The translations under genes and the position numbers were made by a program. From IMG/VR virus record IMGVR_UViG_3300044641_009805, positions 186,001 through 250,000 of that record: a stretch of 64,000 bases of DNA; one strand, given 5' to 3'. The notes under the pieces were generated by a model. That model was not told the origin of the DNA. It searched no databases and saw nothing but the letters and a program-made list of their open reading frames with translations. This document shows positions 19,845 through 64,000 of this stretch, one piece after another (within the stretch, counting starts at the first letter, position 1; each line of letters begins with the position of its first letter).

Positions 19845-20075
19845 ATGAACGACTTACTACGCCGTTATGTTCTAGAGATCATAAAAGAATCAAGCTTGAA
19901 GATTGATGAAGATGAAGACGAAAAAGAACCAAAGTCAGATTCTGATGACATCAACGAATTTAGCGGCGTAGGCGCAATAGCGGGTTTTACCGCTCCTTTG
20001 GGATGGACGAGTAAAGACATGGAGTCTCCTAAAGTTAAAGAAAGAAAGAAGAGAAAACAACCGGCCTGGAAGTGA
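19845..20075 (+). CDS. Small acidic/basic hypothetical protein with N-terminal helix tag
   Basis: MNDLLRRYVLEIIKE start. ATAGTTA lies 5 nt upstream of the ATG. Confidence 0.7.
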   Translation: MNDLLRRYVLEIIKESSLKIDEDEDEKEPKSDSDDINEFSGVGAIAGFTAPLGWTSKDMESPKVKERKKRKQPAWK

Positions 20076-20076
20076 C

Positions 20077-20385
20077 ATGAAAAGCTTATTTCTACCATAT
20101 GCTGTTCTATTCGTGATAGGCATTGTAGGAGCATTCATCACGAAAAAAGTACAGGCATCTGAGTTACCCATTTGGGTCCCCATATTCCCTTCTATCGCAA
20201 GTGGATTCTTATGGGGGTGGATCGCGAAGAGGTCGGAAAACCTGAGCCTCATGTCCGTTCTTGTTGACGTTCTTTACACGGCTGCTTTCGTCATCGGCTT
20301 CATGATCTTAGGTGACAGACTCACCCCGTTGCAGATAGCAGGATTTTTGGTGTCGTTGATCGGCGTCGCAATGATGGCAGCCTAA
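20077..20385 (+). CDS. Small 4-TM membrane protein, SMR/EamA (DMT)-like
   Basis: Four hydrophobic segments. C-terminal GDRLTPLQIAGFLVSLIGVAMM resembles EamA ends. Confidence 0.6.
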   Translation: MKSLFLPYAVLFVIGIVGAFITKKVQASELPIWVPIFPSIASGFLWGWIAKRSENLSLMSVLVDVLYTAAFVIGFMILGDRLTPLQIAGFLVSLIGVAMMAA

Positions 20386-20638
20386 AATTGCGATTCTGCA
20401 ATATTTATACCATCGACTTGTTCGATGCGGAAACGGACTGGACATGGGAATTAAAAATAAAACTTGCTCTGTCGAATCGGCATCGTGCAAAGTTGACGTC
20501 AGGAATAATAAAACGATACATCTCGTTTACCCTGGCTTAGTTTAAAAATGACTTGAATGTCCAACCAAGACTTGGTTCGCATGTTGCGGATTCGTCAAGG
20601 ATGTTTCATTCACAGCGGAAACGGAAAAGGAAAATAAC
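20386..20638 (+). promoter_or_regulatory. Long structured leader/intergenic region upstream of ssb
   Basis: ATATTTA at 20401; hairpin CATCGA/TCGATG at 20411-27; palindrome AACCAAG-A-CTTGGTT at 20563-77; direct repeat GCGGAAACGGA at 20427 and 20615. Confidence 0.45.
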
Positions 20639-21478
20639 ATGGCAATCGATCTAGAAGCAATCAAGCGTCGCGTGGCAGAACTCAGTGGTGTGAAGAAGAC
20701 GTCATCAGTCCAGATGTGGAAGCCACAAATCGGAGAATACAAGATTCGTTGTCTTCCATGGAAGAATGCTCCTGAGGGCCAACCCTTCGCCGAGAGGTGG
20801 TTCTATTATATTGGAGAGAACGCAGGCCTTCTGGCGCCGAATCAGTTCGGTAAGCCAGATCCCATCAACGATCTGATTCGCAAGCTGTATAGCAGCGGTA
20901 AGCCAGATGATAGGGTTCTTGCGAAGAAGCTTGCCCCTAAGATGCGTTGCTACGCTCCCGTTGTCGTTCGAGGTGAGGAAGACAAGGGCGTGCAGGTTTG
21001 GGCATTCGGCAAGATCGTATATCAGCGTATGCTTGGTTTCTTCCTCGATGAGGAGGTTGGAGACATCTTGGATCCGAACCAAGGATTCGACCTCAAGGTG
21101 ACAATCTCCAAGGCACCAGGCAAGCAGTTCAATGACACGATGGTGGATCCTGCTCGCCGCCCCTCAAAGCTGCATGAGGATCCAAAGGTCATGGCGACGT
21201 GGCTTGAAAACATTCCAAACATCGATGACATGTATCGTCTTAAGTCAACTCAAGAGATTGAAGCAGTCCTCAATAACTGGCTCAATGGTGGCGCGACGGA
21301 TGACACACCTGTTGAGACGACCCGTGGACCTGCAACAGCAGATGCTCTTGAAGATCTTGTGGCAGAAGTGAAAGCTTCGTCTCCTGAGAAGCCGAAGAAA
21401 CCGAAGAAGGCCGATGAGGATGCTCCAAAGAAACAGTCGTTAGATGATGCATTCGCTGACCTGATGGGCGACGAGTGA
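20639..21478 (+). CDS. Single-stranded DNA-binding protein, T4 gp32-like
   Basis: WKP..GEYKIRCLP, PF.E.W.YY, VVVRGEEDKGVQVWAFGK, GFDLKV, acidic C-tail LDDAFADLMGDE. Confidence 0.85.
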   Translation: MAIDLEAIKRRVAELSGVKKTSSVQMWKPQIGEYKIRCLPWKNAPEGQPFAERWFYYIGENAGLLAPNQFGKPDPINDLIRKLYSSGKPDDRVLAKKLAPKMRCYAPVVVRGEEDKGVQVWAFGKIVYQRMLGFFLDEEVGDILDPNQGFDLKVTISKAPGKQFNDTMVDPARRPSKLHEDPKVMATWLENIPNIDDMYRLKSTQEIEAVLNNWLNGGATDDTPVETTRGPATADALEDLVAEVKASSPEKPKKPKKADEDAPKKQSLDDAFADLMGDE

Positions 21479-21490
21479 TTTGACGATATC

Positions 21491-21524
21491 AAGCGCCGGG
21501 GAAATTAAAAAATCCCCGGCGCTT
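21491..21524 (+). terminator. 12-bp perfect hairpin after ssb (probable terminator) overlapping the recA -35 box
   Basis: AAGCGCCGGGGA (21491-502) and TCCCCGGCGCTT (21513-24) with a 10-nt A-rich loop. No U-tract on the + strand. Confidence 0.6.
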
Positions 21525-21552
21525 GAACTATTTAATGCTCTTAAAGGATAAT
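21523..21552 (+). promoter_or_regulatory. Sigma70-like promoter TTGAAC-N18-GATAAT for recA
   Basis: The -10 ends 6 nt before ATG 21559, consistent with a leaderless transcript. Confidence 0.45.
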
Positions 21553-21558
21553 AAACGT

Positions 21559-29534: not shown

Positions 29535-29798
29535 ATGAAATTAAAAGCCAAAGATCTTCGTAGGATAATAAAAGAAGAATTTTCTAGCACAATTCCTGAC
29601 TTTATGTTACGTCAAATGGCGGAAAAGTGCTCTGAGGATCTTAAACGATTGATGATAAATCACATTAAAGTAAAATCACCAGCTGATCGTACTTATATGA
29701 TTGCTTTAGCTAACAAAGTATCTGAAGACTTGGAAGAAGAAGTAAAAAAGTTACTCGACGAAAAACTATCGGAGTTTTTGAATAGATCTTCTCATTGA
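29535..29798 (+). CDS. Hypothetical protein with N-terminal helix tag
   Basis: MKLKAKDLRRIIKEE start. Confidence 0.7.
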   Translation: MKLKAKDLRRIIKEEFSSTIPDFMLRQMAEKCSEDLKRLMINHIKVKSPADRTYMIALANKVSEDLEEEVKKLLDEKLSEFLNRSSH

Positions 29799-29805: not shown

Positions 29806-30465
29806 ATGCCTGCACAAAATAATAAAGTAGAGCTGATCGGGTATTACGGATCTGATGAAACCCATGCGCTTTCAGCGTGGACATCAACATCAAGAGATCT
29901 GACTGAAGAAAAAAAGAATAGAATACCTTCCTTGTTGAAGATGTTAGCTGAGAATGAACACCATTCTGTTTTTGAAAAATCTTCAATTCATTTTCTAGTT
30001 ACCAGCGATGTTGCTTCACACATACACTTAATCAAGCATAGAATCGGCGTATCAATCAATGCTGAATCAGCTAGGTACAAGGAATTGAAAGATGATAAGT
30101 ACTATGTTCCTGTTGATTGGGATAATGAAGAAGCGATTGCATACGTGATGCATATGGATCATTCTTTACAAAAATATCATGAAACTCTTGAGAGACTTGT
30201 GCGAAAAGGTATGTCACGCAAGCGTGCTAAAGAATCTGCAAGATTGTATTTGCCTTATGGTAATCAGATCACTGCTGATGTTATGTTCAATTTTAGAAGC
30301 TTTTATCATTTTTTGAAGCTTCGGTATTCTGAGCATGCTCAATTAGAGATAAGGAATATCGCACAACAGATGTTGGAACTTGTCGTAGCATCCAAAGCAT
30401 TTCCTGCTACTCTTGAAGCTTTTGGGTTAGTCGTTAACGGTGAGATCAGAGAACCTTTTTCTTGA
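29806..30465 (+). CDS. thyX: Flavin-dependent thymidylate synthase
   Basis: HHSVFE, KHRIGVSINAESARY (RHRx7-8S motif variant), ESARLYLP, NFRSFYHFL.LR...HAQLEIR. Confidence 0.92.
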   Translation: MPAQNNKVELIGYYGSDETHALSAWTSTSRDLTEEKKNRIPSLLKMLAENEHHSVFEKSSIHFLVTSDVASHIHLIKHRIGVSINAESARYKELKDDKYYVPVDWDNEEAIAYVMHMDHSLQKYHETLERLVRKGMSRKRAKESARLYLPYGNQITADVMFNFRSFYHFLKLRYSEHAQLEIRNIAQQMLELVVASKAFPATLEAFGLVVNGEIREPFS

Positions 30466-32367: not shown

Positions 32368-32889
32368 ATGAAAATAACTCATAATCAGCTTAGAAGAATC
32401 ATTAAAGAAGAGTATGAAAGAGCAACACCAGTTCAACCTGGACAGATAATGTCAGAAGCTAGAGCCATGTATCTGGCTGAAGAGGTCATGAACGAGGGAT
32501 TTTTTAAGAATGTTTGGGCGGGTCTCACAGGCGCGGGAAAAGAAGCTGGTAAAAAAGCTGGAGCTGCTAAAGATGTGGTAGTTAAAAAAGCCACAGCTGC
32601 AGGACAAGAAATTTCAGCTGCTGCTAAAAGATTTGCGGAACCAATCGCCGCTGCTGGAAGAACTGCAGTAAAAGCAATAGAAGACATTAAAGACGCAGGC
32701 ACTCGTGCTGCCGCTGAAAGTGCAGCAGCTGAATTGAAAGCCGCCTTGGAACCTATGATTAAGAAGCAAGTTGCAGAGCTAATCAAAAATGAAGTCAAGT
32801 CAGGAAAAGACGAAGCAGCTGCTAAAGTAGAAGCAGAAGCAATAGTCATGAATGCTTTAGCAGCTGCTCTGATGGGTATAGGAACTTGA
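32368..32889 (+). CDS. Ala/Lys-rich hypothetical protein with N-terminal helix tag (candidate internal head protein)
   Basis: MKITHNQLRRIIKEE start; Ala-rich helical body. Confidence 0.75.
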   Translation: MKITHNQLRRIIKEEYERATPVQPGQIMSEARAMYLAEEVMNEGFFKNVWAGLTGAGKEAGKKAGAAKDVVVKKATAAGQEISAAAKRFAEPIAAAGRTAVKAIEDIKDAGTRAAAESAAAELKAALEPMIKKQVAELIKNEVKSGKDEAAAKVEAEAIVMNALAAALMGIGT

Positions 32890-32905: not shown

Positions 32906-33526
32906 ATGAAATCTCTACAAGAAAAATCTAAAGTAAATCCAGGTTACATAAAAGGGTTATCAGGATCCGAGGCCGCCAAGCGTAAGAAAGAAATTGAGCG
33001 CGGTTCTAAAACGGACTCAGATGATCCTTCTGCATATGATGATGACAGATTTCAGACAGATTTTACTTCTAGTGGAGAAAGAAAAAAGACAAAACCATCG
33101 AAACACACCAAAGCCTTTAAACGTATGTTTGGTGAGATGGTTGACGAGTTTGATGATGTTTTAGAAGAAGACTTTGGGTCTGATGGCTTGCTTGAAGAAG
33201 ACATTGATTTTTTGATCGATCTATCTCTACTTAGAGAGTTCATAGGCGAGATTTTGAATGAGAAGAAAAAAGGATCAAACGTCACGACAGCCTTAAAAAA
33301 TAAGGCTGAAAAGTCAGGCGCTCCTATGGGCGCTCTTCGTGCGATCTATAATAAAGGATTGGCTGCGTGGAGAACTGGCCATCGCCCTGGTGCTTCGCCA
33401 CATCAGTGGGCGATGGCAAGAGTCAACAGCGTTCTTGCAGGAGGTCCAGCAAGAAAAGTTGATGCAGCGCAATGGGAAAAGATAAAAAAACATCGCGGTA
33501 AAAAAAGAAAGAAAAAGAAAGATTGA
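32906..33526 (+). CDS. Basic hypothetical protein with conserved GHRPG...QWAMARVNS domain (DUF5824-like by recollection)
   Basis: LRAIYNKGLAAWRTGHRPGASPHQWAMARVNSVL; poly-Lys C-tail; internal LLREFIGEILNE. Confidence 0.7.
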   Translation: MKSLQEKSKVNPGYIKGLSGSEAAKRKKEIERGSKTDSDDPSAYDDDRFQTDFTSSGERKKTKPSKHTKAFKRMFGEMVDEFDDVLEEDFGSDGLLEEDIDFLIDLSLLREFIGEILNEKKKGSNVTTALKNKAEKSGAPMGALRAIYNKGLAAWRTGHRPGASPHQWAMARVNSVLAGGPARKVDAAQWEKIKKHRGKKRKKKKD

Positions 33527-36404: not shown

Positions 36405-36478
36405 ATCTTTATATTCTATTTTCAACAATGATGTAATATCTTCTGTTGGATAATAGTTATGACAGGAGTTTTGCATTC

Positions 36479-37543
36479 ATGCGTTTGAAGATAACTGACT
36501 TACAACGTATCGTAGAAGAAACGGTACAAGAGAAAAAAGCAGTGGCAGAATTTTGTTCAGAGATAAAAAGAGTCTTTGGACCGACTGTGATTGTTGCAAA
36601 TGATGTGGTGGCTTTGTCTGAACAAGCCAACGATCGTTTGGATGTGCTAGAAAGAACTGGTAGAAGAAACTACATAAAGTTCTCTGCAAACGCAGCTCTC
36701 AAAGTAGCTCATCACAAGAATCCAGAAATCAGGAGATTGGCTATTAGATTGTTGCCAGAACATCTAGCATGCAAATTTATTAATGATAAGGTTCCTTTTG
36801 TTCGAGCCGCCGCCGCGCAAAACTCTCCCGTCAAGTTAATTGAAGAGACGATCAAAAAATATCCGACAGATGACACCCTACGTGATATCTTAAAACAAAA
36901 GCGTCTTACTGAGAGTAAGCCTGCTCTTAAGTCTGCTGCGTCAAGTCCTGAAGGAGAATCTTTCCTTAGCGACGCATGGTATGATTCAAAAGCCCGTAAA
37001 TTGATACAAGACTATGGTAGAACCCTGGACACAGGGTGGGTTTCTGCAGCGGTAAATCAATATTGTTCAGCCGCTAGATCCGTCAATCGCTACAACATAG
37101 ACTCTTATAAGCTCATGAAAAAAGTTGTAGAGATAATGGCTGACAACGAAGAAGAACGCAGAGACAAATTAGAGCTTAATGAATCGTTTAAACATGACGT
37201 TCAAGAATCAGATGAGCAGAATGATCAGGTAGAAAGCTTGTTAGAAACAGCTTCATTACCTAATGAATACATCACAAAAGCTCATGATGTTTTTTCTATG
37301 AAAATTACGAAGTTGGTTAAAGATGATGATCTCAATGAAGGTATAGCGGAATTTATTTCTGTTCCCTTATCAGGAATGTTACCTCATCAATCTTCTCCCA
37401 GATTTACGGATGAAATTGCTTTAGACACGTATGTGAAGCATTGGAACAATAAGCAAGCGCTTCAAGGAAGCAACTATAGACTTTCTTGGTCGCCACATCC
37501 AGAGATTCAAAATAAAGTCAAATTTTATCTGGGGTCAAAATGA
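36479..37543 (+). CDS. Hypothetical protein with N-terminal helix tag and HEAT-like segment
   Basis: MRLKITDLQRIVEE start; HKNPEIRRLAIRLLP...DKVPFVRAAAA. ATAGTTA at 36453. Confidence 0.75.
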   Translation: MRLKITDLQRIVEETVQEKKAVAEFCSEIKRVFGPTVIVANDVVALSEQANDRLDVLERTGRRNYIKFSANAALKVAHHKNPEIRRLAIRLLPEHLACKFINDKVPFVRAAAAQNSPVKLIEETIKKYPTDDTLRDILKQKRLTESKPALKSAASSPEGESFLSDAWYDSKARKLIQDYGRTLDTGWVSAAVNQYCSAARSVNRYNIDSYKLMKKVVEIMADNEEERRDKLELNESFKHDVQESDEQNDQVESLLETASLPNEYITKAHDVFSMKITKLVKDDDLNEGIAEFISVPLSGMLPHQSSPRFTDEIALDTYVKHWNNKQALQGSNYRLSWSPHPEIQNKVKFYLGSK

Positions 37544-38102: not shown

Positions 38103-38663
38103 ATGAAAATTAAATTTGAACAGTTAAGAAGAATCATAAAAGAAGAAATTACTCTTGCAAAATCAGGCGAAAATCAAAGATTTTTACATGGACCTGACGA
38201 TGAAGGTGCAATGGTAAAATCTAGTTTGTCAGCCATGATGAATATGGCTTCTGATATTCAAGATGTCATGGCAGACGATGATCAACTCCCGGGTTGGGTT
38301 CAAGATCATCTTTCTGTTGCTCATGAAAATCTGCAACAGGTTCATGGTTATTTGATGGGAACATTGAAGCAAGAATCTAGATCTAGTAATCAGAAAAAAA
38401 ATATTTCAGAGTCTATTTCTAAGATTACGACAAGAGAAATTAAAGAATGGTCGAAAGGCAATTGGGGATTCATTTCTGAGACATCTCAATCTGTTGACCC
38501 CGATCGAATTAGAGAAGTTTGGGAAGACCTAGGCGGGTACAATGGCTCTAAAGTTACAGTTGAAGATATAGCTTTAGAATTGAGAGTTCTTCCAACGGAT
38601 GTTAACATGAATGGAACAGGCCTTGTGGTTCTTGATGGTGTTGTACAAAGAGAGTCATTCTAA
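38103..38663 (+). CDS. Hypothetical protein with N-terminal helix tag
   Basis: MKIKFEQLRRIIKEE start; QLPGWVQDHLSVAHENLQQVHGYL. Confidence 0.75.
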   Translation: MKIKFEQLRRIIKEEITLAKSGENQRFLHGPDDEGAMVKSSLSAMMNMASDIQDVMADDDQLPGWVQDHLSVAHENLQQVHGYLMGTLKQESRSSNQKKNISESISKITTREIKEWSKGNWGFISETSQSVDPDRIREVWEDLGGYNGSKVTVEDIALELRVLPTDVNMNGTGLVVLDGVVQRESF

Positions 38664-38680: not shown

Positions 38681-39934
38681 ATGGGTGGTAATACTAAGGC
38701 TATAGATCGTGAGACTGGAGAAGTTGTAAACTTCTTTGGTCGTCCTGGGTATGCAGACAAAATAGATCTTAAAAAATTAGATCGCTCTTCTCTAAAAAGA
38801 TCTATCATTACTGCTTTAAAAAATTTGGATTCGTCGTATGAGAATGAATTTGGCGTTCCTATTTGGGATCGTTCGCAACGAAATTCATTACTCTCATCCG
38901 GTGAGGCGTTTAACGGATCTTCTGAACATCTATTCAACGATAAAATAACGGATAAAGAATTCACAAAATTTAAGCCTTCGGTAGGCGATATTGACTTGAC
39001 AGTTCCTGCTGAAAAAATAGAAACTATATTTGATCTACTAGCTTCTCTTGAAGGAAAAGAAGTGGTACCTGGGAAAATTTGGTATGTAGGACAAAATAGA
39101 AAAAAGTACGGAGGAGATCAAATAAATGCTTTGTTTGCGTACAGGCAAACAAAAGACGCAGACCCAGTATTCGTTCAAGTTGATTTTGAATCAGTAGACT
39201 ATGCTGGGGGGCGTCCGGATTCATTTGCGAAATTTGGACATTCTTCGGCTTGGGAAGACGTAAAAGAGGGCGTAAAAGGCGTGTTCCACAAATATTTGTT
39301 GAGATCTCTAACGACAAAATCAACTCTAAATGATGCAGTCATTCTTGCCAAGAATAGCCCAGTATACCCACCAGAAAAAATAAAGATTAAGAAGAAATCT
39401 GATCCAATTAAGCTGCTCTCGTTTTCTGTTTCGCAAGGGTTGAGAACCACTGTGGAGTTGCAGAAATACCCTGACGATCCTAATATTCCGAAAGAACTAA
39501 TCGGTCAACCTGTTAAATTAGGAGATTCTTTCGTTTATAGAGAACTATCAACAGCAGAATCAAGCTACGTAAAAAATATAGACGAAATATTTACGTTGTT
39601 GTTTGGTAAGGTTCCTTCGTCGTCAGATGACATGACAAAATTGCAATCTTTTTCTGGTATACTTTCGTTAATGAAAATGTATATGTCAGATGATGACATA
39701 GAAAATATCTACGAAGATTTTGTTAATGAAAAGCTATTTTCTCCTGAAGCTCAAGGATTAGATTTGACAAGTGCAGAAGTAGATAAATCTTCGAAGCTCG
39801 CCGCCGTAGGAAGATTTAGAAAAGAGTTTCCGTTTTTGGCAGAACCAGATGCGACCATGGTGCAATCTTATTATTCTTCGTATAAGATAAGAGAATCTAT
39901 ATCCAGGTATATACGCATCTTATTCGGTCGATAA
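38681..39934 (+). CDS. Pol-beta-superfamily nucleotidyltransferase-like protein
   Basis: MGGN start, GSS, GDIDL, third acidic residue in VQVDF. Confidence 0.65.
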   Translation: MGGNTKAIDRETGEVVNFFGRPGYADKIDLKKLDRSSLKRSIITALKNLDSSYENEFGVPIWDRSQRNSLLSSGEAFNGSSEHLFNDKITDKEFTKFKPSVGDIDLTVPAEKIETIFDLLASLEGKEVVPGKIWYVGQNRKKYGGDQINALFAYRQTKDADPVFVQVDFESVDYAGGRPDSFAKFGHSSAWEDVKEGVKGVFHKYLLRSLTTKSTLNDAVILAKNSPVYPPEKIKIKKKSDPIKLLSFSVSQGLRTTVELQKYPDDPNIPKELIGQPVKLGDSFVYRELSTAESSYVKNIDEIFTLLFGKVPSSSDDMTKLQSFSGILSLMKMYMSDDDIENIYEDFVNEKLFSPEAQGLDLTSAEVDKSSKLAAVGRFRKEFPFLAEPDATMVQSYYSSYKIRESISRYIRILFGR

Positions 39935-41620
39935 ATGTTAGATATTTCAATTCTAGAACTAAAAAAAGCAGTCAAGACTCCGAAGGCTGCCTCTAATTTT
40001 ATCAGAAAGCATATCAAGGTTGTCGAGAAAATCGACGGAACGAAACTTACCTTGATACGCAATGATGCGCAATTTGACCCAAATGACTATACAAAAAACT
40101 GGATTATTTCGTATAAGGGAAACATCATTTATTCTACGGAATTTTCTGGATTGGAAAAGAGAGATAAAGACATTAAAACGTCTGGGCTAGGTACGTCTCA
40201 ATATAAATTTGTGTATGATCATTTGAAAAGAGTCCATGAAGGAACTGCTTCAATTCCTCTCAATACAGAATTTTTTATAGAATTTGTTCAAAATAAACCT
40301 ACTGTAACTAGAGATTATGCGAAGAAACACGGCATGTTCTTGGTCGGATTTGGGCCGGCAGTGTATGCATCATCTAAAGGGCAAATCTATTCTTCATCCA
40401 CATTTGTTGATGATCCTGCTAAGTTAGAAGAGTACAGAGAAATATTACAGTTAAATTCTTTTCCATTACTCTACGAAGGTAATTTGTCTTCTAGGACGGA
40501 GATATTCGATAATAGCGAATATCTTGATCCAAGGCTTAGAGAATTATTCTCACAGAATCTAGAGACAGTGGATTTTTCAAATCCGCAAGAGATTCTTGAC
40601 GGAGTTGTTAGTTCTTTTCAAGCTTTGGAGTCCTCGTTAGGAGGACAATCAGAAGGAGTTGTCATCACCGTCGAAGGTGATGACATGTCTGAGAAGCAGC
40701 TATATAAAGTTTTAGCAGCCGATCAACACAACAAAGAAGTAAGAGAGAAAAAGAAATCTAGGTATAAGGGCACCCCGCAAGAAGAAGCAGCGTATTGGGA
40801 AGACATCAACGCTACTACTGATCTAATTCTGGACGAATTGCAGATTGATGCTAGGGATTCTCGACCTGAAGAAGCGTTGAAAGACTTGTCGGCAAGAGTT
40901 TATGAGATGTCTGAAGAAGACATAGGAGCATATCATCCTGTTAAAACTCTTTTAAATAAGCAAGAAGATTTAATGCTGACTGCTAAAACCAGATTGTTCG
41001 TTTTAGGTCATAGACTCAAAAAGATAGCTGTCATTCCTATGGCTGCAAAACCTTTTCACAGAGGTCATCAAGCGTTATTGGATGCAGCAGAAGCAGACGG
41101 AAATGAATTAATTCTAGTGTATGTATCTACGGGGGGAAGAGACGAAATAAGTTCTTCTGACATGGTCCCGTTGTGGAAAAACTACTACTTGCCAGCCATA
41201 CAAGAGACGTATGGAGATAAGGTCGCCATCAGGTTCACAAAAGGAATTTCTCCCATGTATGAACTGAGATCTGCAATCTCCAACCTAGTCAGACAATCAG
41301 AAGAAACAGTAGTGACTCTTTATGGAGATCCAGAAGATGCTGCCCGCCGCGTCGACGATATAATCAATAACGAAAAAAACGTGGTTGATCTAACGAGAAA
41401 AGTCGTGGCAGGATCGGTACCCAGAGAATCTTCCGGCGGAATTTCTGGCACAAAAATGAGAGAATTTTTGTCGACTGGACAAAGAGAACAGTTCATGAAG
41501 AATTTGCCTGATTTTTTGAACGAAGATTCAAAACTAGCAATTTGGAATTCTTTGTCAAAAAGTAAAGTTTCGCAAAGTGAAAATCTATTGAAATCATATG
41601 TAAGATTAATTCTTGCATAA
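39935..41620 (+). CDS. Fusion of ATP-dependent ligase-type nucleotidyltransferase domain and HxGH (cytidylyl/adenylyl)transferase domain
   Basis: N-terminal EKIDG (motif I), FFIEF (III), EGVVI (IV), LYKV (V). C-terminal KPFHRGH and ISGTKMR. Confidence 0.75.
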   Translation: MLDISILELKKAVKTPKAASNFIRKHIKVVEKIDGTKLTLIRNDAQFDPNDYTKNWIISYKGNIIYSTEFSGLEKRDKDIKTSGLGTSQYKFVYDHLKRVHEGTASIPLNTEFFIEFVQNKPTVTRDYAKKHGMFLVGFGPAVYASSKGQIYSSSTFVDDPAKLEEYREILQLNSFPLLYEGNLSSRTEIFDNSEYLDPRLRELFSQNLETVDFSNPQEILDGVVSSFQALESSLGGQSEGVVITVEGDDMSEKQLYKVLAADQHNKEVREKKKSRYKGTPQEEAAYWEDINATTDLILDELQIDARDSRPEEALKDLSARVYEMSEEDIGAYHPVKTLLNKQEDLMLTAKTRLFVLGHRLKKIAVIPMAAKPFHRGHQALLDAAEADGNELILVYVSTGGRDEISSSDMVPLWKNYYLPAIQETYGDKVAIRFTKGISPMYELRSAISNLVRQSEETVVTLYGDPEDAARRVDDIINNEKNVVDLTRKVVAGSVPRESSGGISGTKMREFLSTGQREQFMKNLPDFLNEDSKLAIWNSLSKSKVSQSENLLKSYVRLILA

Positions 41621-54742: not shown

Positions 54743-55087
54743 ATGAAAAAATTAACAGAAAAAGAAGTAGTAAGACTTTTACGAGAAGAGTGGAATAAAA
54801 AAATAGAGTCTTTCCTCCCTGAAAAAGACAAATTAGAAAAGAAAGACAAGAAAAAAGCTGACACTGATTTGTCTGTAGAATTTCCACTCAAAGGAGAAAA
54901 AGAGATTGTTATATCTCCTGAATTCAAGGTGAAAAGTAAAAAAGGAACGGGGCAGGGTCTTTTGTACACTGTTTCAAACGTGAATCCAACCAGCAAAACC
55001 ATCACTTTAACTCACCAAAAAGAAGATGGCGTGGCAGAAACAACGGTAACTTTTGATGAATTTGTAAAAGAATTCGAGAGGCAGTAA
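54743..55087 (+). CDS. Hypothetical protein with N-terminal helix tag
   Basis: MKKLTEKEVVRLLREE start; ATAATTA at 54715. Confidence 0.7.
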   Translation: MKKLTEKEVVRLLREEWNKKIESFLPEKDKLEKKDKKKADTDLSVEFPLKGEKEIVISPEFKVKSKKGTGQGLLYTVSNVNPTSKTITLTHQKEDGVAETTVTFDEFVKEFERQ

Positions 55088-55091: not shown

Positions 55092-55820
55092 ATGAACAAG
55101 CTTATAGATCCTCAAAAAATAGACTCGTTATTAAAAAAAGCTGTTAAGGACAGCATCTCCAAAAAAGCGCCATCTATTGGTTTAACGCCTCAAGCAGATC
55201 AGATAAATGAATCTTACGTTGCTGAGCCCAAGGTTTTTAAACAAGTAACTGAGTTTGTTACTCAAAAAACCAAAGATGCTCATTATGATCTCTACAAGGG
55301 CTACGTCGAATCATTCAACAAAGTATCTGCTGAACTCGACACTTCAAAACGTGGAGATGCTAACCCTCGTCACTCATCGTATAAATCTCTGAAAAAAGAT
55401 GAGGTTTATAACCTAAACGCGATTTGGCTTCACGAGTTATACTTCTCGAATTGTTTCGACCCACATTCTGAGATCACGATGGACTCTTTGTCTTATTTAC
55501 GATTGGAACGAGATTTCGGCACATTTGAAGACTGGCAAAGAGATTTCATAGCGTGTTCAAACTCAGCAGGAGTTGGTTGGGCTGTTTGCGGATATCACAT
55601 GTTTTTGCAGCGATATGTGAATACTTTCGTCGGAAGTCATGATGCGAATGTCATGTTGGGTATATACCCAGTGATCGTTCTAGACGTTTGGGAACATGCT
55701 TATCGTGATTACTTGAACGACAAACAGAGCTATATAGTTTCTCAAATGAGAGAAATTAATTGGAATGTGGTTGAAGAAAGAGTTAAGAAAGCCGAGCAAA
55801 TTGCGCAGGTATTAAAATGA
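55092..55820 (+). CDS. sod: Fe/Mn superoxide dismutase-like protein with ~40-aa N-terminal extension
   Basis: Metal ligands HYDLY, LHELYF, DVWEHAY; FGTFEDWQRDF, GWA, REINW..VEER. Confidence 0.85.
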   Translation: MNKLIDPQKIDSLLKKAVKDSISKKAPSIGLTPQADQINESYVAEPKVFKQVTEFVTQKTKDAHYDLYKGYVESFNKVSAELDTSKRGDANPRHSSYKSLKKDEVYNLNAIWLHELYFSNCFDPHSEITMDSLSYLRLERDFGTFEDWQRDFIACSNSAGVGWAVCGYHMFLQRYVNTFVGSHDANVMLGIYPVIVLDVWEHAYRDYLNDKQSYIVSQMREINWNVVEERVKKAEQIAQVLK

Positions 55821-56359
55821 AAATTCATTTAAAAGAGTTGAAAAAGATTATTAAAGATAGCGTATCTCATTTGCTCGAGGAGAAAAGCAAATCTTCTAAA
55901 GTAGAATCGGAAGACTCTTTAGACTCGCAAATAGACTCTTACTTCGCCAAATATGAAAAAGAAGCGACCTCTGTTAAAAAAGAAGGATTTGATTTCAAAA
56001 TCATGACGAGAAATTTTCTGTTAGAAGCAGAAGATGACAAAGCAGGCAAAGATGATAAAGCTCAAGAAGCTCCATCTGATCTTACGATCGATGATATAGA
56101 TCTAGAATCCTTTACAAACAGCGTAGTTCGTTTAATTGATAACTACGATTCTCTTTTAGAGGTAAGAGACACTGTGGTTCGTAGAGCCGTAAATTTCTTA
56201 TCAAAGAGTTATGATTCGAGCGTCATACAATCATTTAAAGAAATATTAGAAGAACAGTATGATATAGAAGTTGGCAAGAATCAATCAGAAGAAAAATTTT
56301 CGAAATTCCCAGCACCACCAGCCGATAGAGCTATGGGACCATCTGGAGGTGGTGCTTGA
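55817..56359 (+). CDS. Acidic hypothetical protein with N-terminal helix tag
   Basis: MKIHLKELKKIIKDS..HLLEE start. Confidence 0.72.
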   Translation: MKIHLKELKKIIKDSVSHLLEEKSKSSKVESEDSLDSQIDSYFAKYEKEATSVKKEGFDFKIMTRNFLLEAEDDKAGKDDKAQEAPSDLTIDDIDLESFTNSVVRLIDNYDSLLEVRDTVVRRAVNFLSKSYDSSVIQSFKEILEEQYDIEVGKNQSEEKFSKFPAPPADRAMGPSGGGA

Positions 56360-60700: not shown

Positions 60701-60749
60701 TGATTGATTCAAGCGTCTAATATATAGTTATACCAGGAGTCACGTCACA

Positions 60750-60917
60750 ATGGAACGAGATGAACAAGATATAAATTTTGACAAATTTATGGATGATATT
60801 CTCATTAAAGAGTCAAAGAAAAAGCAGGAATTAGTTGAAGAAACTCCGCAACGTAAATATGTAAAAAAGTATACAGAGCGTGCTTCAAATCGCATTAGAT
60901 TTTCTAAGGTGTTATGA
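60750..60917 (+). CDS. Small hypothetical protein (55 aa; not in the ORF track)
   Basis: MERDEQDINFDKFMDDILIKE... Preceded by ATAGTTA (60724) and SD AGGAG; its stop overlaps the next ATG. Confidence 0.7.
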   Translation: MERDEQDINFDKFMDDILIKESKKKQELVEETPQRKYVKKYTERASNRIRFSKVL

Positions 60918-61414
60918 TGTCTAATCGTCCTACTATAAAATCTGGAGAAACGCTTAGCAGTTTTTTATCTGAGATTATTAAAGAATCTTATTCTGAAAAG
61001 ATAAGACTGTCTGAGAAAAAAGATGCGGAAGCTTTATCAACAGGAGATATTTCTGTCGAGGACGTGGTCGATAAGTTGAACGTAATTCGATCAGGAAAAT
61101 CTTTTAAGGATGAAGAAGTTCTAGCAAATATGCAAAAATACTTAGAAGATCTTGACAAGCCAGAAAAAACAGCGCTTCTTGCATTTTTAAAGGGCATATC
61201 TGAAATAGTTACTGCAGGTGTATCAGGAGCCAAAGCGTTTGAACCAACAGACACTCCTTCTAAAGTGAAGATGAAAAAGAAGTCATCTGAAAAGCAAAAG
61301 GTTTCTGTCACGCCGAATGTGATAAAAAAGCCAGAGTCTGAAGAGACTACAAAGTCTTCTAGTCCTTCAGAAGATACTTCTCCTCCTGCCCCGATTGAAC
61401 CCAAGAAGAAATAG
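60914..61414 (+). CDS. Hypothetical protein with helix tag
   Basis: LSSFLSEIIKE; KLNVIRSGKSFKD; Lys/Ser/Pro-rich tail. Confidence 0.72.
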   Translation: MMSNRPTIKSGETLSSFLSEIIKESYSEKIRLSEKKDAEALSTGDISVEDVVDKLNVIRSGKSFKDEEVLANMQKYLEDLDKPEKTALLAFLKGISEIVTAGVSGAKAFEPTDTPSKVKMKKKSSEKQKVSVTPNVIKKPESEETTKSSSPSEDTSPPAPIEPKKK

Positions 61415-61423: not shown

Positions 61424-61432
61424 TCAATCATT

Positions 61433-61642
61433 ATGGAAGAAGTTAGGCGAATACATTTACATGATGGTGAAGTGCTTGAAGTCTCTATGAGACCAGGATT
61501 TCTTGAAAGAATCTCTTCACATTTTCAGCTAGCTAAAGCTGAAAACGTAACAGATGATCACATACGTATGTACATATTTGATGTATTTAAAAATGCGATA
61601 GACAAGGCTGAAAATGAAGGATTCAGAGAAAATTCTGCTTGA
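61433..61642 (+). CDS. Hypothetical protein
   Basis: 69-aa ORF after the promoter. Confidence 0.65.
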   Translation: MEEVRRIHLHDGEVLEVSMRPGFLERISSHFQLAKAENVTDDHIRMYIFDVFKNAIDKAENEGFRENSA

Positions 61643-61886
61643 ATATGTTACTTTAATACTTGAAAAAAAGATTAGAGAAGCCGACATATCTGACGGTCAA
61701 AAGGCCAAATGGGGATCAAGAAAACACATCTCAGATCTCAAGCGCCGTTTGAAAGAAGCTGAGTACTGGCGTGACAAGCAAAAGAAGGGCTCTGAAAAAA
61801 GAGCCCATTATAGAAATGTTGTTAATGACATCAAACGTCAGTTAAAAGCTGCTATAAAAAAAGAAAAAGTTGAAGACGAAAAGTAA
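61614..61886 (+). CDS. Basic hypothetical protein with helix tag
   Basis: KILLEYVTLILE; WGS.KHISDLKRRL. Confidence 0.7.
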   Translation: MKDSEKILLEYVTLILEKKIREADISDGQKAKWGSRKHISDLKRRLKEAEYWRDKQKKGSEKRAHYRNVVNDIKRQLKAAIKKEKVEDEK

Positions 61887-61889
61887 TTT

Positions 61890-62915
61890 TTACTTTTCGT
61901 CTTTTACAATTTCGTCTTTCTTAACTTTGCCGCTTTCAGGCTGCTGAGAGTTGATTAAACTTAGAATTTTTTCTTTTCCTGCGACGGAAACCACGATTCT
62001 TCCACCTTGCGTCGTCGCAACTATCGAGATAATATCTTTTGTAGCAAAAAACAACGAATTATTCTCATACCACACAATGCCTACTGCATCTCCCACTGCG
62101 GCTTTGATAGCTTCAGCATTGATTATTTTGTAGATGTTTTCCGGCGTGTAATCTTGCAAGTCGTTTTTCTTGAATTCATCCGACCATTTCTTTAGAAGAT
62201 TTGCGAATTGTTTTTGACCAAATTCTGTCAAATCGCTGATGTCTGAAATACCCATTCTTACGAGTTTTAGTACGAATGGAGTGCTAGTAAGCAACTTTCC
62301 TTTTGCTGAACCCATCTTGATTCCAGCGGTTTTAGACCCAGCTTTAACGTGCCAAGGTTCATTATTGATTGTTACATCATATAAAGAATTGCTTTTTTCA
62401 CCAGTACTTGTGTTTTCAAACATCAGACGAATCACAATTTCGCCTGCTCCAATTTGCATACCACCAGCTTTAGGATTAGTCGACAATCTTGCTACATCAC
62501 GCAAAACTTCAGGCACATTTATTGACGTATTAGCAGGCGCCGCAGCCAGCTTAAATAAAGAAGCCTCTAGCTTCGCTGGATCTTTTTTTGAAAGTAGAAT
62601 CTTAAGCTCGTCTCTTAGTACGTTTGTGCTTTCTACAATTCCCTTTAGTTTTTCAGAAACTGCTGGGTCGATACGATCTATGCCTTGTAACAAATTTTCA
62701 TAATCTTGGGATTCTTTCGCGGAAGGCTTTGACCCTTGCTCTACTGGAGATGTCCGATCTTTAGTTGTCGCCTTTAAAATAGAAGTTTTAATTTTCTTTG
62801 CGACTTTATCAGGAACTTCGAATTCTTCGTCATTAATAGTGACTTTTACTTCAAGCAATTGTTTTACGTACTCTCTAAGCAATGTTACGCTGCTTTTTCT
62901 ATTGTTATATGGCAT
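61890..62915 (-). CDS. Tagged protein with putative PD-(D/E)XK restriction-like nuclease fold
   Basis: LLREYVKQLLE tag; IGAGEIV...LYDVTINNEPWHVK. Confidence 0.6.
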   Translation of the reverse strand: MPYNNRKSSVTLLREYVKQLLEVKVTINDEEFEVPDKVAKKIKTSILKATTKDRTSPVEQGSKPSAKESQDYENLLQGIDRIDPAVSEKLKGIVESTNVLRDELKILLSKKDPAKLEASLFKLAAAPANTSINVPEVLRDVARLSTNPKAGGMQIGAGEIVIRLMFENTSTGEKSNSLYDVTINNEPWHVKAGSKTAGIKMGSAKGKLLTSTPFVLKLVRMGISDISDLTEFGQKQFANLLKKWSDEFKKNDLQDYTPENIYKIINAEAIKAAVGDAVGIVWYENNSLFFATKDIISIVATTQGGRIVVSVAGKEKILSLINSQQPESGKVKKDEIVKDEK

Positions 62916-62969
62916 ATCTAGATCTAATAATCCTATATTTATCTACTTAACAGGATAAATTTAGAATTT

Positions 62970-63389
62970 ATGGTACCAACAAGATTTTCATGCGGAGCTG
63001 TAGTTTATAGAAAGCAACCTACTTGCACGCAAATCTTATTGGTGAAGCAGTCTACAAATGATGAAGCTTGGGGAATTCCGAAAGGCCACATGGAGTATGG
63101 CGAAACATACGTAGAGACAGCTGTTAGAGAAACCTTTGAAGAGGCTGGAATTGACATAAAAATAATCACGCAATTACCCCACGTGTTCATAACAAGAAAA
63201 AAATATAAAAAAATTGTGATACCTTTCCTAGCAATACAAACATGTGATCGTGAGCCGAGCAGCGGTCATGAAGCTTCAGAAGTCGTAGAAGCAAGATGGT
63301 TCGATATAAAAAAGTTGCCTCCGTTGTGCTCGTATCAGCGTCCTATCTTCGATGCAGCTCTTTTGATGTTGGAGATGGGAAATGGATGA
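62970..63389 (+). CDS. Nudix hydrolase (Ap4A-hydrolase-like)
   Basis: SCGAVVY, WGIPKGHMEYGETYVETAVRETFEEAG Nudix box. Confidence 0.92.
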   Translation: MVPTRFSCGAVVYRKQPTCTQILLVKQSTNDEAWGIPKGHMEYGETYVETAVRETFEEAGIDIKIITQLPHVFITRKKYKKIVIPFLAIQTCDREPSSGHEASEVVEARWFDIKKLPPLCSYQRPIFDAALLMLEMGNG

Positions 63390-63630
63390 AAAGAAGCTAG
63401 AGCAAATTTTGTTAGAAATACGTAGTTATGCTATGAACGTGAAAGATTGGCAGACTATAAAAAAGGAAATTTTAAAATCCTTGCCTCCATCTGACAGGAA
63501 GTTTTTTTCTACAAGAGATCCATACACCAAACAGCAGACGTTAAATGAATTTGAACGTACGGTTGTAGAAAAATGGGAGAAATTAACGAGCGTTAAACTG
63601 ATAATTAAGAGTCGTGATGCAAGAAAATAA
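63382..63630 (+). CDS. Hypothetical protein
   Basis: 82-aa ORF overlapping the Nudix stop. Confidence 0.6.
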   Translation: MDEKKLEQILLEIRSYAMNVKDWQTIKKEILKSLPPSDRKFFSTRDPYTKQQTLNEFERTVVEKWEKLTSVKLIIKSRDARK

Positions 63631-64000
63631 ATTATTAAGAGAGTACGTTCGACGAATTCTAACAGAAGAGATGTCAGGCGACTATTCGGCGTCCTACATG
63701 TCAGGTGGTAGTACCTTTGGTGGCACAGCCATAAAGACAGCATTCGTAGATCCCGTTACTGATATTTTCAAGATATTGAAAGGTAGAGCAAAAGAATTAT
63801 TCTCAGGAGTAAAAAGACTCGCCCGCGTGTCTCTTAGCGGAGGGTTGGGTCTCTTGACAGCTGGCGCTTGGGAACCGAATTATCAAGCCGCCAAAGACGC
63901 GTACAACAATGAAATATCGAAGATAAGAAGTGAGTATGAAGGTGCAAGATCGGCCGGTATAAAAGCTTTGTTGGCTAGCGATTTAGTCGCAATCGGTTTT
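63617..64000 (+). CDS. Hypothetical protein with helix tag (3' truncated by window)
   Basis: ATG 63617 MQENKLLREYVRRILTEE, open to the window end; ATAATTA at 63601. Confidence 0.75.
   Translation, partial: MQENKLLREYVRRILTEEMSGDYSASYMSGGSTFGGTAIKTAFVDPVTDIFKILKGRAKELFSGVKRLARVSLSGGLGLLTAGAWEPNYQAAKDAYNNEISKIRSEYEGARSAGIKALLASDLVAIGF

What the first reader, a model, noticed from the sequence alone, without database searches (positions are those of the whole stretch)
19845..64000. A shared amphipathic-helix plus [ILV]xE tag on many unrelated proteins: candidate capsid-targeting/maturation-protease signal
Seen at N-termini: MNDLLRRYVLEIIKE (19845), MKLKAKDLRRIIKEE (29535), MKITHNQLRRIIKEE (32368), MRLKITDLQRIVEE (36479), MKIKFEQLRRIIKEE (38103), MKKLTEKEVVRLLREE (54743), MKIHLKELKKIIKDS..HLLEE (55817), ITESALREFLREML (58248), LSSFLSEIIKE (60914), KILLEYVTLILE (61614), LLREYVKQLLE (62915, minus) and MQENKLLREYVRRILTEE (63617). 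Seen internally: LLREFIGEILNE (32906) and TIRATVRKLLSE (58248). Seen at C-termini: ISRYIRILF (38681) and LLKSYVRLILA (39935). The rest of these proteins are unrelated, and many of the genes follow the ATANTTA motif. Established: T4 internal proteins use an N-terminal CTS (MKTYQEFIAE) that is removed by gp21 cleavage after Glu; phiKZ gp175 also cleaves after Glu. Inference: this may be a portable tag that loads a diverse enzyme cargo into the head for delivery at infection.
Basis: partly seen in the sequence, partly recalled or inferred. Interest (0 to 1): 0.8.

Follow-up and report, generated by a model that had tools for sequence, protein, structure and literature searches.

The report
T4-style capsid-targeting tag, expanded
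A large uncultured freshwater T4-like phage puts the same ~15-residue N-terminal helix ending in Ile-Ile-Lys-Glu on at least a dozen unrelated small proteins, and comparison with its own head genes and with phage T4 indicates, without experimental proof, that this is a signal that loads them into the capsid and is then cut off by the head protease.

Summary
All the listed peptides are present at the stated coordinates. The N-terminal ones are far beyond chance. The window is part of a 278 kb freshwater far-T4 myovirus contig.

Twelve window proteins, and more just outside the window, start with an amphipathic helix. Its consensus is M-K-[IL]-T-x-x-Q-L-[RK]-[RK]-I-I-[KR]-E-E.

- A pattern fixed beforehand from the T4 capsid targeting sequence (PHI-x-x-PHI-PHI-x-E) occurs 16 times at N-termini, against 3.6 in shuffles.
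- An HMM of the window tags finds 74 unique proteins in clade relatives, against 0 in shuffles. They fall into 35 families that share nothing but the tag.
- The phage encodes a T4 gp21-type protease (Peptidase_S77).
- In this genome and its relatives the tag sits on small genes packed between portal, protease, scaffold and capsid genes.
- The residues that align with T4's known gp23 and gp24 cleavage sites read Q-V-L-K-E|S in this phage's capsid protein, which matches the end of the tag.

The capsid-targeting and cleavage reading is therefore well supported by comparison, but nothing has been tested at the bench. I rate it a new variant of a known kind.

The parts
19845..20075 (+). 76-aa tagged protein. 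The tag is at nt 19845-19892 (MNDLLRRYVLEIIKES). It is followed by an acidic linker and the motif EFSGVGAIAGFTAPLG. It looks like a relocated small prohead-core protein.
   Evidence: Leave-one-out score 7.0 bits, reached by 0 of 1540 shuffles. It aligns with head-module small core proteins of Flavobacterium phage immuto (gp072, 73 aa), L105 and L076, with M1, E15, E38, G43, A44 and G47 invariant.
29535..29798 (+). 87-aa tagged protein. The tag is at nt 29535-29579 (MKLKAKDLRRIIKEE). It lies directly downstream of the ribonucleotide reductase gene.
   Evidence: 14.0 bits. Nine orthologues in relatives keep the tag.
32368..32889 (+). 173-aa tagged protein. The tag is at nt 32368-32412 (MKITHNQLRRIIKEE).
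   Evidence: 13.2 bits. Orthologues read MKLTKNQLQNIIKEE, MNITESKLREIIKEE and MQITKKQLQQIIKEE.
36479..37543 (+). 354-aa tagged protein, possibly a HEAT/LRV-like repeat protein. The tag is at nt 36479-36523 (MRLKITDLQRIVEET).
   Evidence: It is in register with class A (L8, I11, V12, E14). Orthologues read MRLKLSDLQKVVKET. The leave-one-out score is weak.
38103..38663 (+). 186-aa tagged protein. The tag is at nt 38103-38147 (MKIKFEQLRRIIKEE).
   Evidence: In the family alignment A2, M1 and E14 are invariant and K2, L8 and I12 nearly so. An indel-rich linker of 0-80 aa follows the tag. Family members sit next to the protease in L058 and near the head genes in L083, and between tube and baseplate genes in L020/L021. 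A low-confidence AF2 model shows a helix at 5-20 followed by a disordered stretch at 21-33.
54743..55087 (+). 114-aa tagged protein. The tag is at nt 54743-54790 (MKKLTEKEVVRLLREE).
   Evidence: 8.7 bits. Leave-one-out score 9.3, reached by 0 of 1540 shuffles.
55817..56359 (+). 180-aa tagged protein. The tag is at nt 55817-55882 (MKIHLKELKKIIKDSVSHLLEE). Asp replaces Glu at the first site, and a second LLEE follows.
   Evidence: 10.0 bits. In T4, Asp at the cleavage position blocks processing but not targeting (PMC9026906).
58248..59198 (+). 316-aa tagged protein. The tag is at nt 58248-58301 (MNSIVITESALREFLREM).
Evidence: 6.1 bits. The leave-one-out score is moderate, reached by 20 of 1540 shuffles.
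60914..61414 (+). 166-aa tagged protein. The tag is at nt 60914-60988 and ends ...LSSFLSEIIKES.
   Evidence: 8.6 bits. Leave-one-out score 5.6, reached by 3 of 1540 shuffles.
61614..61886 (+). 90-aa basic protein with a weaker tag at nt 61614-61667 (MKDSEKILLEYVTLILEK).
   Evidence: 5.9 bits. The leave-one-out score is weak, reached by 87 of 1540 shuffles. It matches PHI-x-x-PHI-PHI-x-E.
61890..62915 (-). 341-aa tagged protein on the minus strand. The tag is at nt 62850-62915 (MPYNNRKSSVTLLREYVKQLLE).
   Evidence: The translation is confirmed. The leave-one-out score is moderate, reached by 25 of 1540 shuffles.
63617..64000 (+). Start of a 296-aa tagged protein that runs off the window. The tag is at nt 63617-63670 (MQENKLLREYVRRILTEE).
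   Evidence: 8.8 bits. Leave-one-out score 9.2, reached by 0 of 1540 shuffles. The full gene is seen in L110 10648-11538.
33227..33262 (+). Possible internal tag LLREFIGEILNE|KK (residues 108-119) in the 206-aa DUF5824 protein (gene 32906-33526), at the border of the conserved domain.
   Evidence: The DUF5824 match starts at residue 121. The motif is conserved in the L012 orthologue, which reads LIREFVEEVLNE|KK. It is the top window hit of an HMM built from head-core proteins of other phages, but only marginally: 5.0 bits against a shuffle maximum of 5.9.
39899..39934 (+). C-terminal ISRYIRILFGR of the 417-aa protein.
   Evidence: Below 4 bits with the tag HMM. Not hit by the protease C-terminal HMM. 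The C-termini of orthologues differ.
41585..41620 (+). C-terminal LLKSYVRLILA of the 561-aa RNA-ligase-like protein. It is conserved in orthologues but not shown to be the tag.
   Evidence: Orthologues end ENLIRSYVRSVIKA and ENLIRTYVRSTLTS. Below 4 bits with the tag HMM. No hit with the protease C-terminal HMM. The RNA_ligase match is weak.
36453..36459 (+). One example of the promoter-like ATA[AG]TTA box. Other copies upstream of starts begin at 1106, 1664, 19833, 26897, 47364, 54715, 58229, 60724 and 63601.
   Evidence: Ten of 15 + strand copies lie within 45 nt upstream of a start, against 0.8 expected, p = 4e-10. The same box precedes the tail tube gene and the sheath-3 gene of this phage, and the scaffold gene of L193.

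Best explanation
The tag is this phage lineage's version of the T4 capsid targeting sequence. I propose the following sequence of events.
1. A short N-terminal amphipathic helix presents a hydrophobic face (L8, I11, I12 in the commonest register).
2. This face docks the newly made protein onto the scaffolding core while the prohead is being built.
3. After the shell closes, the gp21-type serine protease (Peptidase_S77) cuts after the conserved Glu of PHI-PHI-[KR]-E.
4. The tag peptide is released, and the mature protein stays inside the head with the DNA. From there it can enter the host at infection.

Shown here:
- the tag exists;
- it is N-terminal, conserved and attached to unrelated proteins;
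- the genome has the protease;
- the tag decorates head-module genes;
- the tag's end equals the predicted capsid-protein maturation site.

Inferred: docking to the core, cleavage, retention in the virion and delivery.
For: Lineage and protease.
- The phage is T4-like. It has gp13, gp15, sheath, tube, gp25 and a T4 baseplate protein, plus Terminase_6N, Portal_T4 and Gp23.
- It has a Peptidase_S77 protease (E = 2.4e-28, 99 bits against a cut-off of 27) in its own head module at record 76-98 kb.

Match to the T4 signal.
- In the T4 CTS MKTYQEFIAE, residues 4 and 7 direct targeting and residues 8 and 10 direct processing (PMC9026906; PMC8442874). That is PHI-x-x-PHI-PHI-x-E, the spacing of the tag.
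- The pattern is 4.5-fold enriched at N-termini only.

Position of the tag in head modules.
- In this genome the tag is on the 141-aa and 78-aa genes between protease and scaffold, and on the 265-aa and 108-aa genes just after the capsid gene.
- In the clade relative L193 it is on 7 small head-module genes.
- In independent Mel-JY01-like loci, 11 of 80 families between portal and capsid genes are tag-positive. The figures are 0 of 35 upstream and 2 of 123 downstream.
- L047 has at least 7 such genes in a row.

Cleavage site.
- The known T4 sites gp23 SFLTE65|A and gp24 ELLRE10|S align with QVLKE60|S in this phage's capsid protein.
- The protease itself has SSETIKE22|S just before its Pfam domain.
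- The tags end IIKE|E.

Modularity and specificity.
- The tag stays at the extreme N-terminus while a linker of 0-80 aa after it varies.
- No tag occurs among 75 tail, baseplate and glycosylation proteins of the same genome, against 14 of 81 in the replication-side region.
- Several tagged genes share a promoter-like box with the tail tube gene.
Against: - There is no proteomic or biochemical evidence of any kind.
- Most tagged genes in the window lie among replication and nucleotide-metabolism genes, not in the late structural block. T4's ipI-III and alt are also scattered.
- The mature parts are not uniformly basic as the T4 internal proteins are (pI 4.5-10.1).
- Tag-like N-termini also occur on large terminase in some relatives (for example MAKSLKELIREEYIK). 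Terminase is not a core protein, so sequence alone gives false positives.
- The tag HMM does not score T4 proteins. The link to T4 is therefore one of pattern and context, not of sequence homology.
- In the 29535 family, conserved sequence follows the tag immediately, so there the helix could be part of the fold.
Confidence: 0.62

Rival explanations
1. The tag does target proteins to the prohead core, but most tagged proteins are expendable core or scaffold components. Like T4 gp67, gp68 and gp22, they would be chopped up and expelled rather than kept as cargo and delivered to the host.
For: - The 19845 protein resembles small head-module core proteins and has a gp67-like acidic stretch.
- The 265-aa tagged protein next to the capsid gene shares the scaffold's C-terminal ERW..LAGI.K motif.
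- Many tagged proteins are small, helical and low in complexity.
Against: - The 35 families are unrelated, and their turnover between relatives looks more like T4's polymorphic internal proteins than like conserved scaffold parts.
- Several tagged proteins are 300-350 aa with distinct folds predicted.
- The window proteins do not show multiple internal PHI-x-E sites above expectation.
Confidence: 0.15
2. The helix is a docking or oligomerisation peptide for some other phage hub, such as a replication or host-takeover complex or a chaperone. Its presence on head-module genes would then be secondary.
For: - Most window copies lie among gp32, UvsX, DnaB, RNR, ThyX and DnaE genes.
- No cleavage has been demonstrated.
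- A terminase N-terminus resembles the tag.
Against: - The tag is strongly concentrated between portal and capsid genes in independent loci and in this genome's own head module.
- It ends in the same PHI-PHI-K-E as the capsid protein's predicted maturation site.
- The conserved Glu (30 of 35 family representatives) has no obvious role in a plain docking helix.
Confidence: 0.13
3. All tagged proteins are fast-diverging paralogues of one ancestral small protein, and only the N-terminal helix has stayed recognisable. There would then be no portable signal.
For: The shared register (tag at residues 8-15 in many) and tandem arrays of tagged small genes (L047, L193) are what gene duplication would give.
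Against: - Lengths range from 60 to 354 aa.
- There is no BLAST link after tag removal, and all 28 hhalign pairs have probability <=3.2%.
- The tag is also on proteins with separate identities, namely the gp67-like core protein and possibly the DUF5824 protein.
- Even if paralogy were true, it would not explain why only the helix and its Glu are kept.
Confidence: 0.06
4. The pattern is a compositional or translational artefact. A+U-rich, Lys/Ile/Glu-rich 5' ends of genes in a genome that lacks Shine-Dalgarno sequences could produce amphipathic-looking N-termini by chance.
For: - MK[IL][KT] starts use A/U-rich codons.
- Many genes lack a Shine-Dalgarno sequence.
Against: - Shuffles that keep the composition of the first 30 residues give 0-3 hits, against 74-128 real ones.
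- None of the 75 tail and glycosylation proteins of the same genome has the tag.
- The register and the Glu are conserved across orthologues that use different codons.
Confidence: 0.02

Closest known systems
Phage T4 capsid targeting sequence (CTS) of internal proteins IPI, IPII, IPIII and Alt, cleaved by gp21 (Mullaney and Black 1996; reviewed in PMC9026906 and PMC3012670)
   Same: - Both are 10-20-residue N-terminal peptides on otherwise unrelated, fast-turning-over proteins.
- Both have PHI-x-x-PHI-PHI-x-E spacing and a Glu at the end.
- Both phages have a gp21-family (Peptidase_S77) protease and a T4-type portal, scaffold and capsid protein.
- In both, the genes are scattered outside the head block.
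   Different: - The consensus differs (MK[IL]T..QL[RK][RK]II[KR]EE against MKTYQEFIAE) and the hydrophobic core is shifted about 4 residues further in.
- There is no detectable sequence homology to T4.
- The repertoire is much larger: at least 19 candidates in the 185 kb of this genome examined, and 35 families in the sampled clade, against 4-5 in T4.
- The cargo is not uniformly basic.
- Nothing has been tested experimentally.
T4 gp23 and gp24 maturation propeptides
   Same: The known sites SFLTE65|A (gp23) and ELLRE10|S (gp24) align column for column with QVLKE60|S in this phage's capsid protein. This gives the same PHI-PHI-x-E as the tag's end.
   Different: Those are structural-protein propeptides, not portable tags. 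Cleavage of this phage's capsid protein is inferred from the alignment only.
Propeptides of giant phages phiKZ, 201phi2-1 and SPN3US, cleaved by gp175 or gp245 (PMC5694885)
   Same: - Many head and ejection proteins carry N-terminal propeptides that are removed after Glu.
- Paralogues share identical N-termini.
- The propeptide of SPN3US gp47 is inferred to target it to the prohead.
   Different: - Those motifs are [SAG]-x-E.
- Their propeptides are often longer than 100 residues and are not a shared short consensus helix.
- Their proteases are only distantly related to gp21, whereas this phage's protease is a clear S77 member.
Encapsulin cargo-loading peptides, and the C-terminal capsid-targeting tail of HK97-type prohead proteases
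   Same: A short portable peptide directs unrelated cargo to the interior of a shell built on the HK97 fold.
   Different: These are usually C-terminal, are not removed by a Glu-specific protease, and have different sequence motifs. This comparison comes from general knowledge and was not tested here.

Membership tests
T4-type capsid targeting sequence (gp21-processed CTS) | The phage encodes a gp21-family prohead protease (Peptidase_S77) with T4-type portal, scaffold and capsid genes | tested here: met
   In L229, which is the same contig at record 76-98 kb: Peptidase_S77 E = 2.4e-28, Portal_T4 E = 6.6e-73, Gp23 E = 3.1e-76 and Terminase_6N.
T4-type capsid targeting sequence (gp21-processed CTS) | A short peptide at the extreme N-terminus (10-20 residues) | tested here: met
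   Tag ends fall at residues 15-25. The first hydrophobic position is at residue 8 or 9 in 22 of 35 family representatives. A whole-protein scan finds N-terminal hits only.
T4-type capsid targeting sequence (gp21-processed CTS) | PHI-x-x-PHI-PHI-x-E spacing (T4 residues 4 and 7 for targeting, 8 and 10 for processing) | tested here: met
   16 N-terminal matches against 3.55 expected. Logo counts out of 35 representatives: L 29, I 26, I 28, E 30. The T4 rule is taken from PMC9026906 and checked on T4 gp23 and gp24.
T4-type capsid targeting sequence (gp21-processed CTS) | The peptide is shared by proteins that are otherwise unrelated | tested here: met
   35 BLAST-unlinked families. All 28 hhalign pairs have probability <=3.2%.
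T4-type capsid targeting sequence (gp21-processed CTS) | Sequence similarity to the T4 CTS itself | tested here: not met
   The window tag HMM scores T4 head proteins below 1 bit. The resemblance lies in pattern and context only.
T4-type capsid targeting sequence (gp21-processed CTS) | The tag is removed by cleavage after Glu | not testable with these tools
   The only support is inference: the tag's end matches the capsid protein's QVLKE60|S, which aligns with the known T4 sites.
T4-type capsid targeting sequence (gp21-processed CTS) | Tagged proteins are found inside the virion, and the tag is sufficient for packaging | not testable with these tools
   No cultured host, and no proteome available here. 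The genomic association with head modules is indirect.
phiKZ-like propeptides (gp175-type processing) | [SAG]-x-E cleavage motif and a phiKZ-type protease | tested here: not met
   The tags end [ILV]-[ILV]-x-E, and the protease is a clear T4 S77 member. The phiKZ-type motif is as described in PMC5694885.

The most novel reading that the evidence does not exclude
An abundant clade of freshwater jumbo T4-like phages may use one short cleavable address tag to pack a large, rapidly changing set of proteins into the head. That set would be about 20 or more per genome and dozens of unrelated families across the clade, several times the T4 repertoire. Many of the genes sit among early-type genes. On this reading, much of the phage's first-minute host-takeover or anti-defence arsenal arrives as ready-made protein with the DNA. 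The tag would then be a sequence-only predictor of the injected proteome in uncultured phages.
Probability: 0.35. Interest if true: 0.75.

Novelty: new variant of a known kind. Interest (0 to 1): 0.62.

Why it matters
If the tag works as inferred, a simple sequence rule identifies which proteins an uncultured phage carries inside its capsid and probably injects. In T4 that class includes anti-restriction proteins and host-modifying enzymes, and it cannot otherwise be recognised from sequence. The finding would mark dozens of unknown protein families as candidate injected effectors in a phage clade seen in many lake metagenomes. It would show that the T4 CTS principle reaches far beyond the T-even phages. 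It would also provide a second, sequence-distinct packaging tag for engineering protein delivery in T4-like capsids.

Tried and rejected
- Walking the contig from the window covered record 130-259 kb and found tail, baseplate, fibre and glycosylation genes but no head module. The head module was finally located at 76-98 kb by querying IMG/VR with a clade relative's capsid protein.
- DNA and protein searches of GenBank phages found no close relative and no homologue of the 38103 family. The nearest cultured phages are Microcystis phage Mel-JY01 and Flavobacterium phage immuto.
- Pfam and PHROGs gave nothing for the tagged proteins. The ESM Atlas gave only a HEAT/LRV lead.
- The big-database search with the 19845 protein returned only unnamed close homologues. 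Their genomic position is conserved next to the HD-domain and gp32 genes.
- An HMM built from head-core proteins of other phages gave only a marginal hit, to the internal DUF5824 motif.
- The AF2 model of the 38103 family has low confidence (pTM 0.31), so I ran no fold search on it.
- A DNA-repeat or promoter-cassette origin of the shared N-termini is rejected, because the codons differ between copies.
- ATANTTA as written is not enriched. Only the narrower ATA[AG]TTA is positionally enriched.

Full report
**What the window is**

The window corresponds to record positions 186,001-250,000 of a 278,435-bp freshwater metagenome contig. The contig is JGI 3300044641 Ga0453727_0000002, also held as IMGVR_UViG_3300044641_009805 and as NCBI JBFDRI010012331.1.

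The contig is a distant T4-like myovirus.
- It has gp13, gp14, gp15, three tandem sheath paralogues, a tube, gp25 and a T4 baseplate protein.
- From window position ~19.2 kb onward it has an HD-domain gene, gp32, a RecA/UvsX-like gene, dUTPase, DnaB, ribonucleotide reductase, ThyX, thymidylate kinase, DnaE and related genes.
- GenBank phages hold no close relative. The nearest cultured phages are Microcystis phage Mel-JY01 (sheath 31% identical) and Flavobacterium phage immuto.

**Checking the observation**

They form one motif with two flavours.
- Class A is M-[KR]-[IL]-[KT]-x-x-x-L-[RKQ]-[RK]-I-[IV]-[KE]-[ED], with the Leu at exactly residue 8. Five proteins carry it, against 0.05 expected.
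- Class B is LL[RK]E[YF]V..[IL]L.E, placed a few residues further in.
- Both reduce to PHI-x-x-PHI-PHI-x-E.

To avoid circularity I fixed that pattern from the T4 literature before counting. In the T4 CTS MKTYQEFIAE, residues 4 and 7 govern targeting and residues 8 and 10 govern processing (PMC9026906; PMC8442874).
- The pattern starts within the first 24 residues 16 times among 76 window proteins. Shuffles give 3.55 +/- 1.87, with a maximum of 10 in 1000.
- It is not enriched in the rest of the proteins.
- Leave-one-out scoring recognises 8 of 12 tags at a level reached by at most 3 of 1540 composition-matched shuffled N-termini. Two more are moderate and two are weak.
- Copies differ at synonymous codon positions, so selection acts on the peptide, not on a DNA repeat.

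- All four score below 4 bits with the tag HMM.
- A model of prohead-protease C-termini does not hit the two C-terminal ones.
- Only the internal LLREFIGEILNE|KK of the DUF5824 protein remains possible. It is conserved in an orthologue, abuts the Pfam domain and scores marginally.

**Is the tag portable?**

An HMM built from the 12 window tags was run on relatives fetched through the 38103 protein, gp13 and the capsid protein.
- In the clade loci it finds 74 unique proteins at 6 bits or more in the first 30 residues. Shuffles that keep the composition of those 30 residues give 0.
- With the tag removed, these proteins fall into 35 families with no BLAST link.
- For the eight largest families, all 28 profile-profile comparisons have probability <=3.2%.
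- Using one representative per family, the logo is [T]-x-x-[QED]-L(29/35)-[RK]-[RKQ]-I(26)-I(28)-[KR]-E(30)-E(22).
- Within orthologous families the tag stays at the extreme N-terminus. The stretch after it gains and loses 0-80 residues (38103 family) or an acidic linker (19845 family). That is the behaviour of a module, not of part of a fold.
- A low-confidence AF2 model shows a helix at residues 5-20 followed by a disordered stretch.

**What links the tag to the capsid**

1. The phage has the enzyme. Its own head module lies at record 76-98 kb (locus L229). In order it encodes:
 - Terminase_6N;
 - a 102-aa protein;
 - Portal_T4;
 - a 286-aa protein;
 - Peptidase_S77 (E = 2.4e-28);
 - a 141-aa protein starting MKMTRNELKDLVKEC;
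 - a 78-aa protein starting MKLTSNLLKRIIMQE;
 - a 164-aa protein;
 - a 632-aa scaffold-like protein;
 - the Gp23 capsid protein;
 - a 265-aa protein starting MKLTKSRLRELVVEE;
 - a little further on, a 108-aa protein starting MKLTERQLRKIILEE.

 The same tag as in the window therefore decorates the small genes that occupy the positions of T4's prohead-core genes.

2. The pattern holds across the clade and beyond.
 - The relative L193 (gp13 78% identical) has seven tagged small genes in its head module.
 - In 80 independent loci fetched with the Mel-JY01 capsid protein, tag-positive families make up 11 of 80 between portal and capsid genes. The figures are 0 of 35 upstream and 2 of 123 downstream, and both downstream families sit right after the capsid gene.
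 - One phage (L047) has at least seven consecutive head-module genes starting MKKSELKQIIKEE.
 - The window's 38103 family has members beside the protease in L058.
 - The window's 19845 protein aligns with the small core protein that lies between portal and protease in immuto (gp072), L105 and L076.

3. The cleavage site matches.
 - T4 gp23 SFLTE65|A and gp24 ELLRE10|S were verified on the T4 record.
 - They align with QVLKE60|S in this phage's capsid protein, QLISE|A in Mel-JY01 and QIVSE|A in immuto.
 - The protease has SSETIKE22|S just before its catalytic domain.
 - The tags end IIKE|E, LLRE|E and ILTE|E.

4. There is a within-genome control. None of the 75 tail, baseplate, fibre and glycosylation proteins of the same contig carries the tag, against 14 of 81 in the replication-side region and 3 of 29 in the head region. 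The tag is therefore not a general habit of this genome's N-termini.

5. There is a hint of co-regulation. ATANTTA as written is not enriched. ATA[AG]TTA, however, lies within 45 nt upstream of a start codon in 10 of its 15 + strand copies, against 0.8 expected. Those copies precede five tagged genes, two operons that contain tagged genes, and the tail tube gene. The same box precedes the sheath-3 gene of this phage and the scaffold gene of L193.

**Mechanism proposed**

The helix docks the protein to the scaffolding core during prohead assembly. The S77 protease then cuts after the conserved Glu. The tag leaves, and the mature protein stays with the DNA.

Shown here are the anatomy, the enrichment, the portability, the protease gene, the head-module association and the site match. 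Docking, cleavage, retention and delivery are inferred.

One window tag (55817) has Asp where the others have Glu, followed by a second LLEE. In T4, Asp at that position blocks processing but not targeting.

**What is not supported**

- The cargo is not recognisably enzymatic.
- The RNA-ligase-like protein, whose C-terminal helix is conserved, cannot be called tagged.
- The mature parts are not uniformly basic.
- Tag-like helices occur on terminase in some relatives, so the sequence alone is not fully specific.
- The window tag HMM does not detect T4 proteins. The relation to T4 is functional analogy within a homologous head-assembly system, not sequence homology of the tag.

**Novelty**

The principle is established for T-even phages: a CTS on diverse internal proteins (PMC3012670). 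Long propeptides are known in phiKZ-like phages (PMC5694885). Literature searches found no description of this consensus or of such an expanded repertoire in environmental T4-like phages. I therefore rate it a new variant of a known kind, of moderate to high interest, mainly as a sequence-only handle on the packaged proteome of uncultured phages.

Noticed in passing
L009 10001-19428 (record 177.6-187.1 kb); the third copy ends at window 1076: There are three tandem tail-sheath paralogues of 1011, 1023 and 1021 aa upstream of the tube gene. T4-like phages normally have a single gp18.
   Followed up: no
window 1676-2599: A gene with a TnsA-like endonuclease N-terminal domain (PF08722) sits between the tail tube gene and the T4_baseplate gene. 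The relative L008 has a different 231-aa gene there, which suggests a mobile insertion.
   Followed up: no
L112 and L029 (record ~130-147 kb): A ~17 kb island carries sugar-nucleotide and glycosyltransferase genes (epimerases, an aminotransferase, an acetyltransferase, a UDP-glucose dehydrogenase and at least 6 glycosyltransferases). It lies immediately upstream of the baseplate module.
   Followed up: no
window + strand copies starting at 1106, 1664, 19833, 26897, 36453, 47364, 54715, 58229, 60724 and 63601: A promoter-like box ATA[AG]TTA lies 6-41 nt upstream of start codons in 10 of its 15 copies, against 0.8 expected. It is shared by the tail tube gene, sheath-3 and several tagged genes, so it may be a late promoter.
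   Followed up: partly
window 38681-42177: This is a cassette of a 417-aa protein, a 561-aa RNA-ligase-like protein (weak PF09414 match, KxDG motif) and a Metallophos_2 phosphoesterase. It is reminiscent of an RNA-repair set. The ligase's C-terminal ENL[IL][KR][ST]YVR helix is conserved in relatives.
   Followed up: partly
window 43832-47416, compared with L013 13549-18443 and L025 13265-18202: The DnaE polymerase gene is intact in the window (1194 aa). In relatives it is interrupted into two pieces by an inserted ORF of ~310 aa, probably a homing endonuclease or intein-type insertion.
   Followed up: no
L229 8049-9947 and 12014-12811; scaffold genes of the L030-L109 loci: The scaffold-like 632-aa protein and the tagged 265-aa protein share a C-terminal ERW..LAGI.K motif. 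Mel-JY01-like scaffolds have a similar ending (..RFKKLAGI..). It may be a conserved capsid-binding tail.
   Followed up: no
L047 3087-8680 (IMGVR_UViG_3300009537_000008): The head module holds at least seven small, mutually unrelated genes that all start MKKSEL[KI][QH][IL]I[KR]EE. This is the most extreme expansion of the tag that I saw.
   Followed up: partly
window 29806-30465 and 52678-53676; also 31914-32267, 55092-55820 and 62970-63389: Both thymidylate synthase types are encoded (ThyX/Thy1 and ThyA). The window also encodes Hsp20, an Fe/Mn superoxide-dismutase C-terminal domain protein and a NUDIX hydrolase.
   Followed up: no
upstream regions across the whole window: Most genes have no recognisable Shine-Dalgarno sequence. 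This points to a host with SD-independent initiation, for example Bacteroidota or cyanobacteria. The host is unknown.
   Followed up: no
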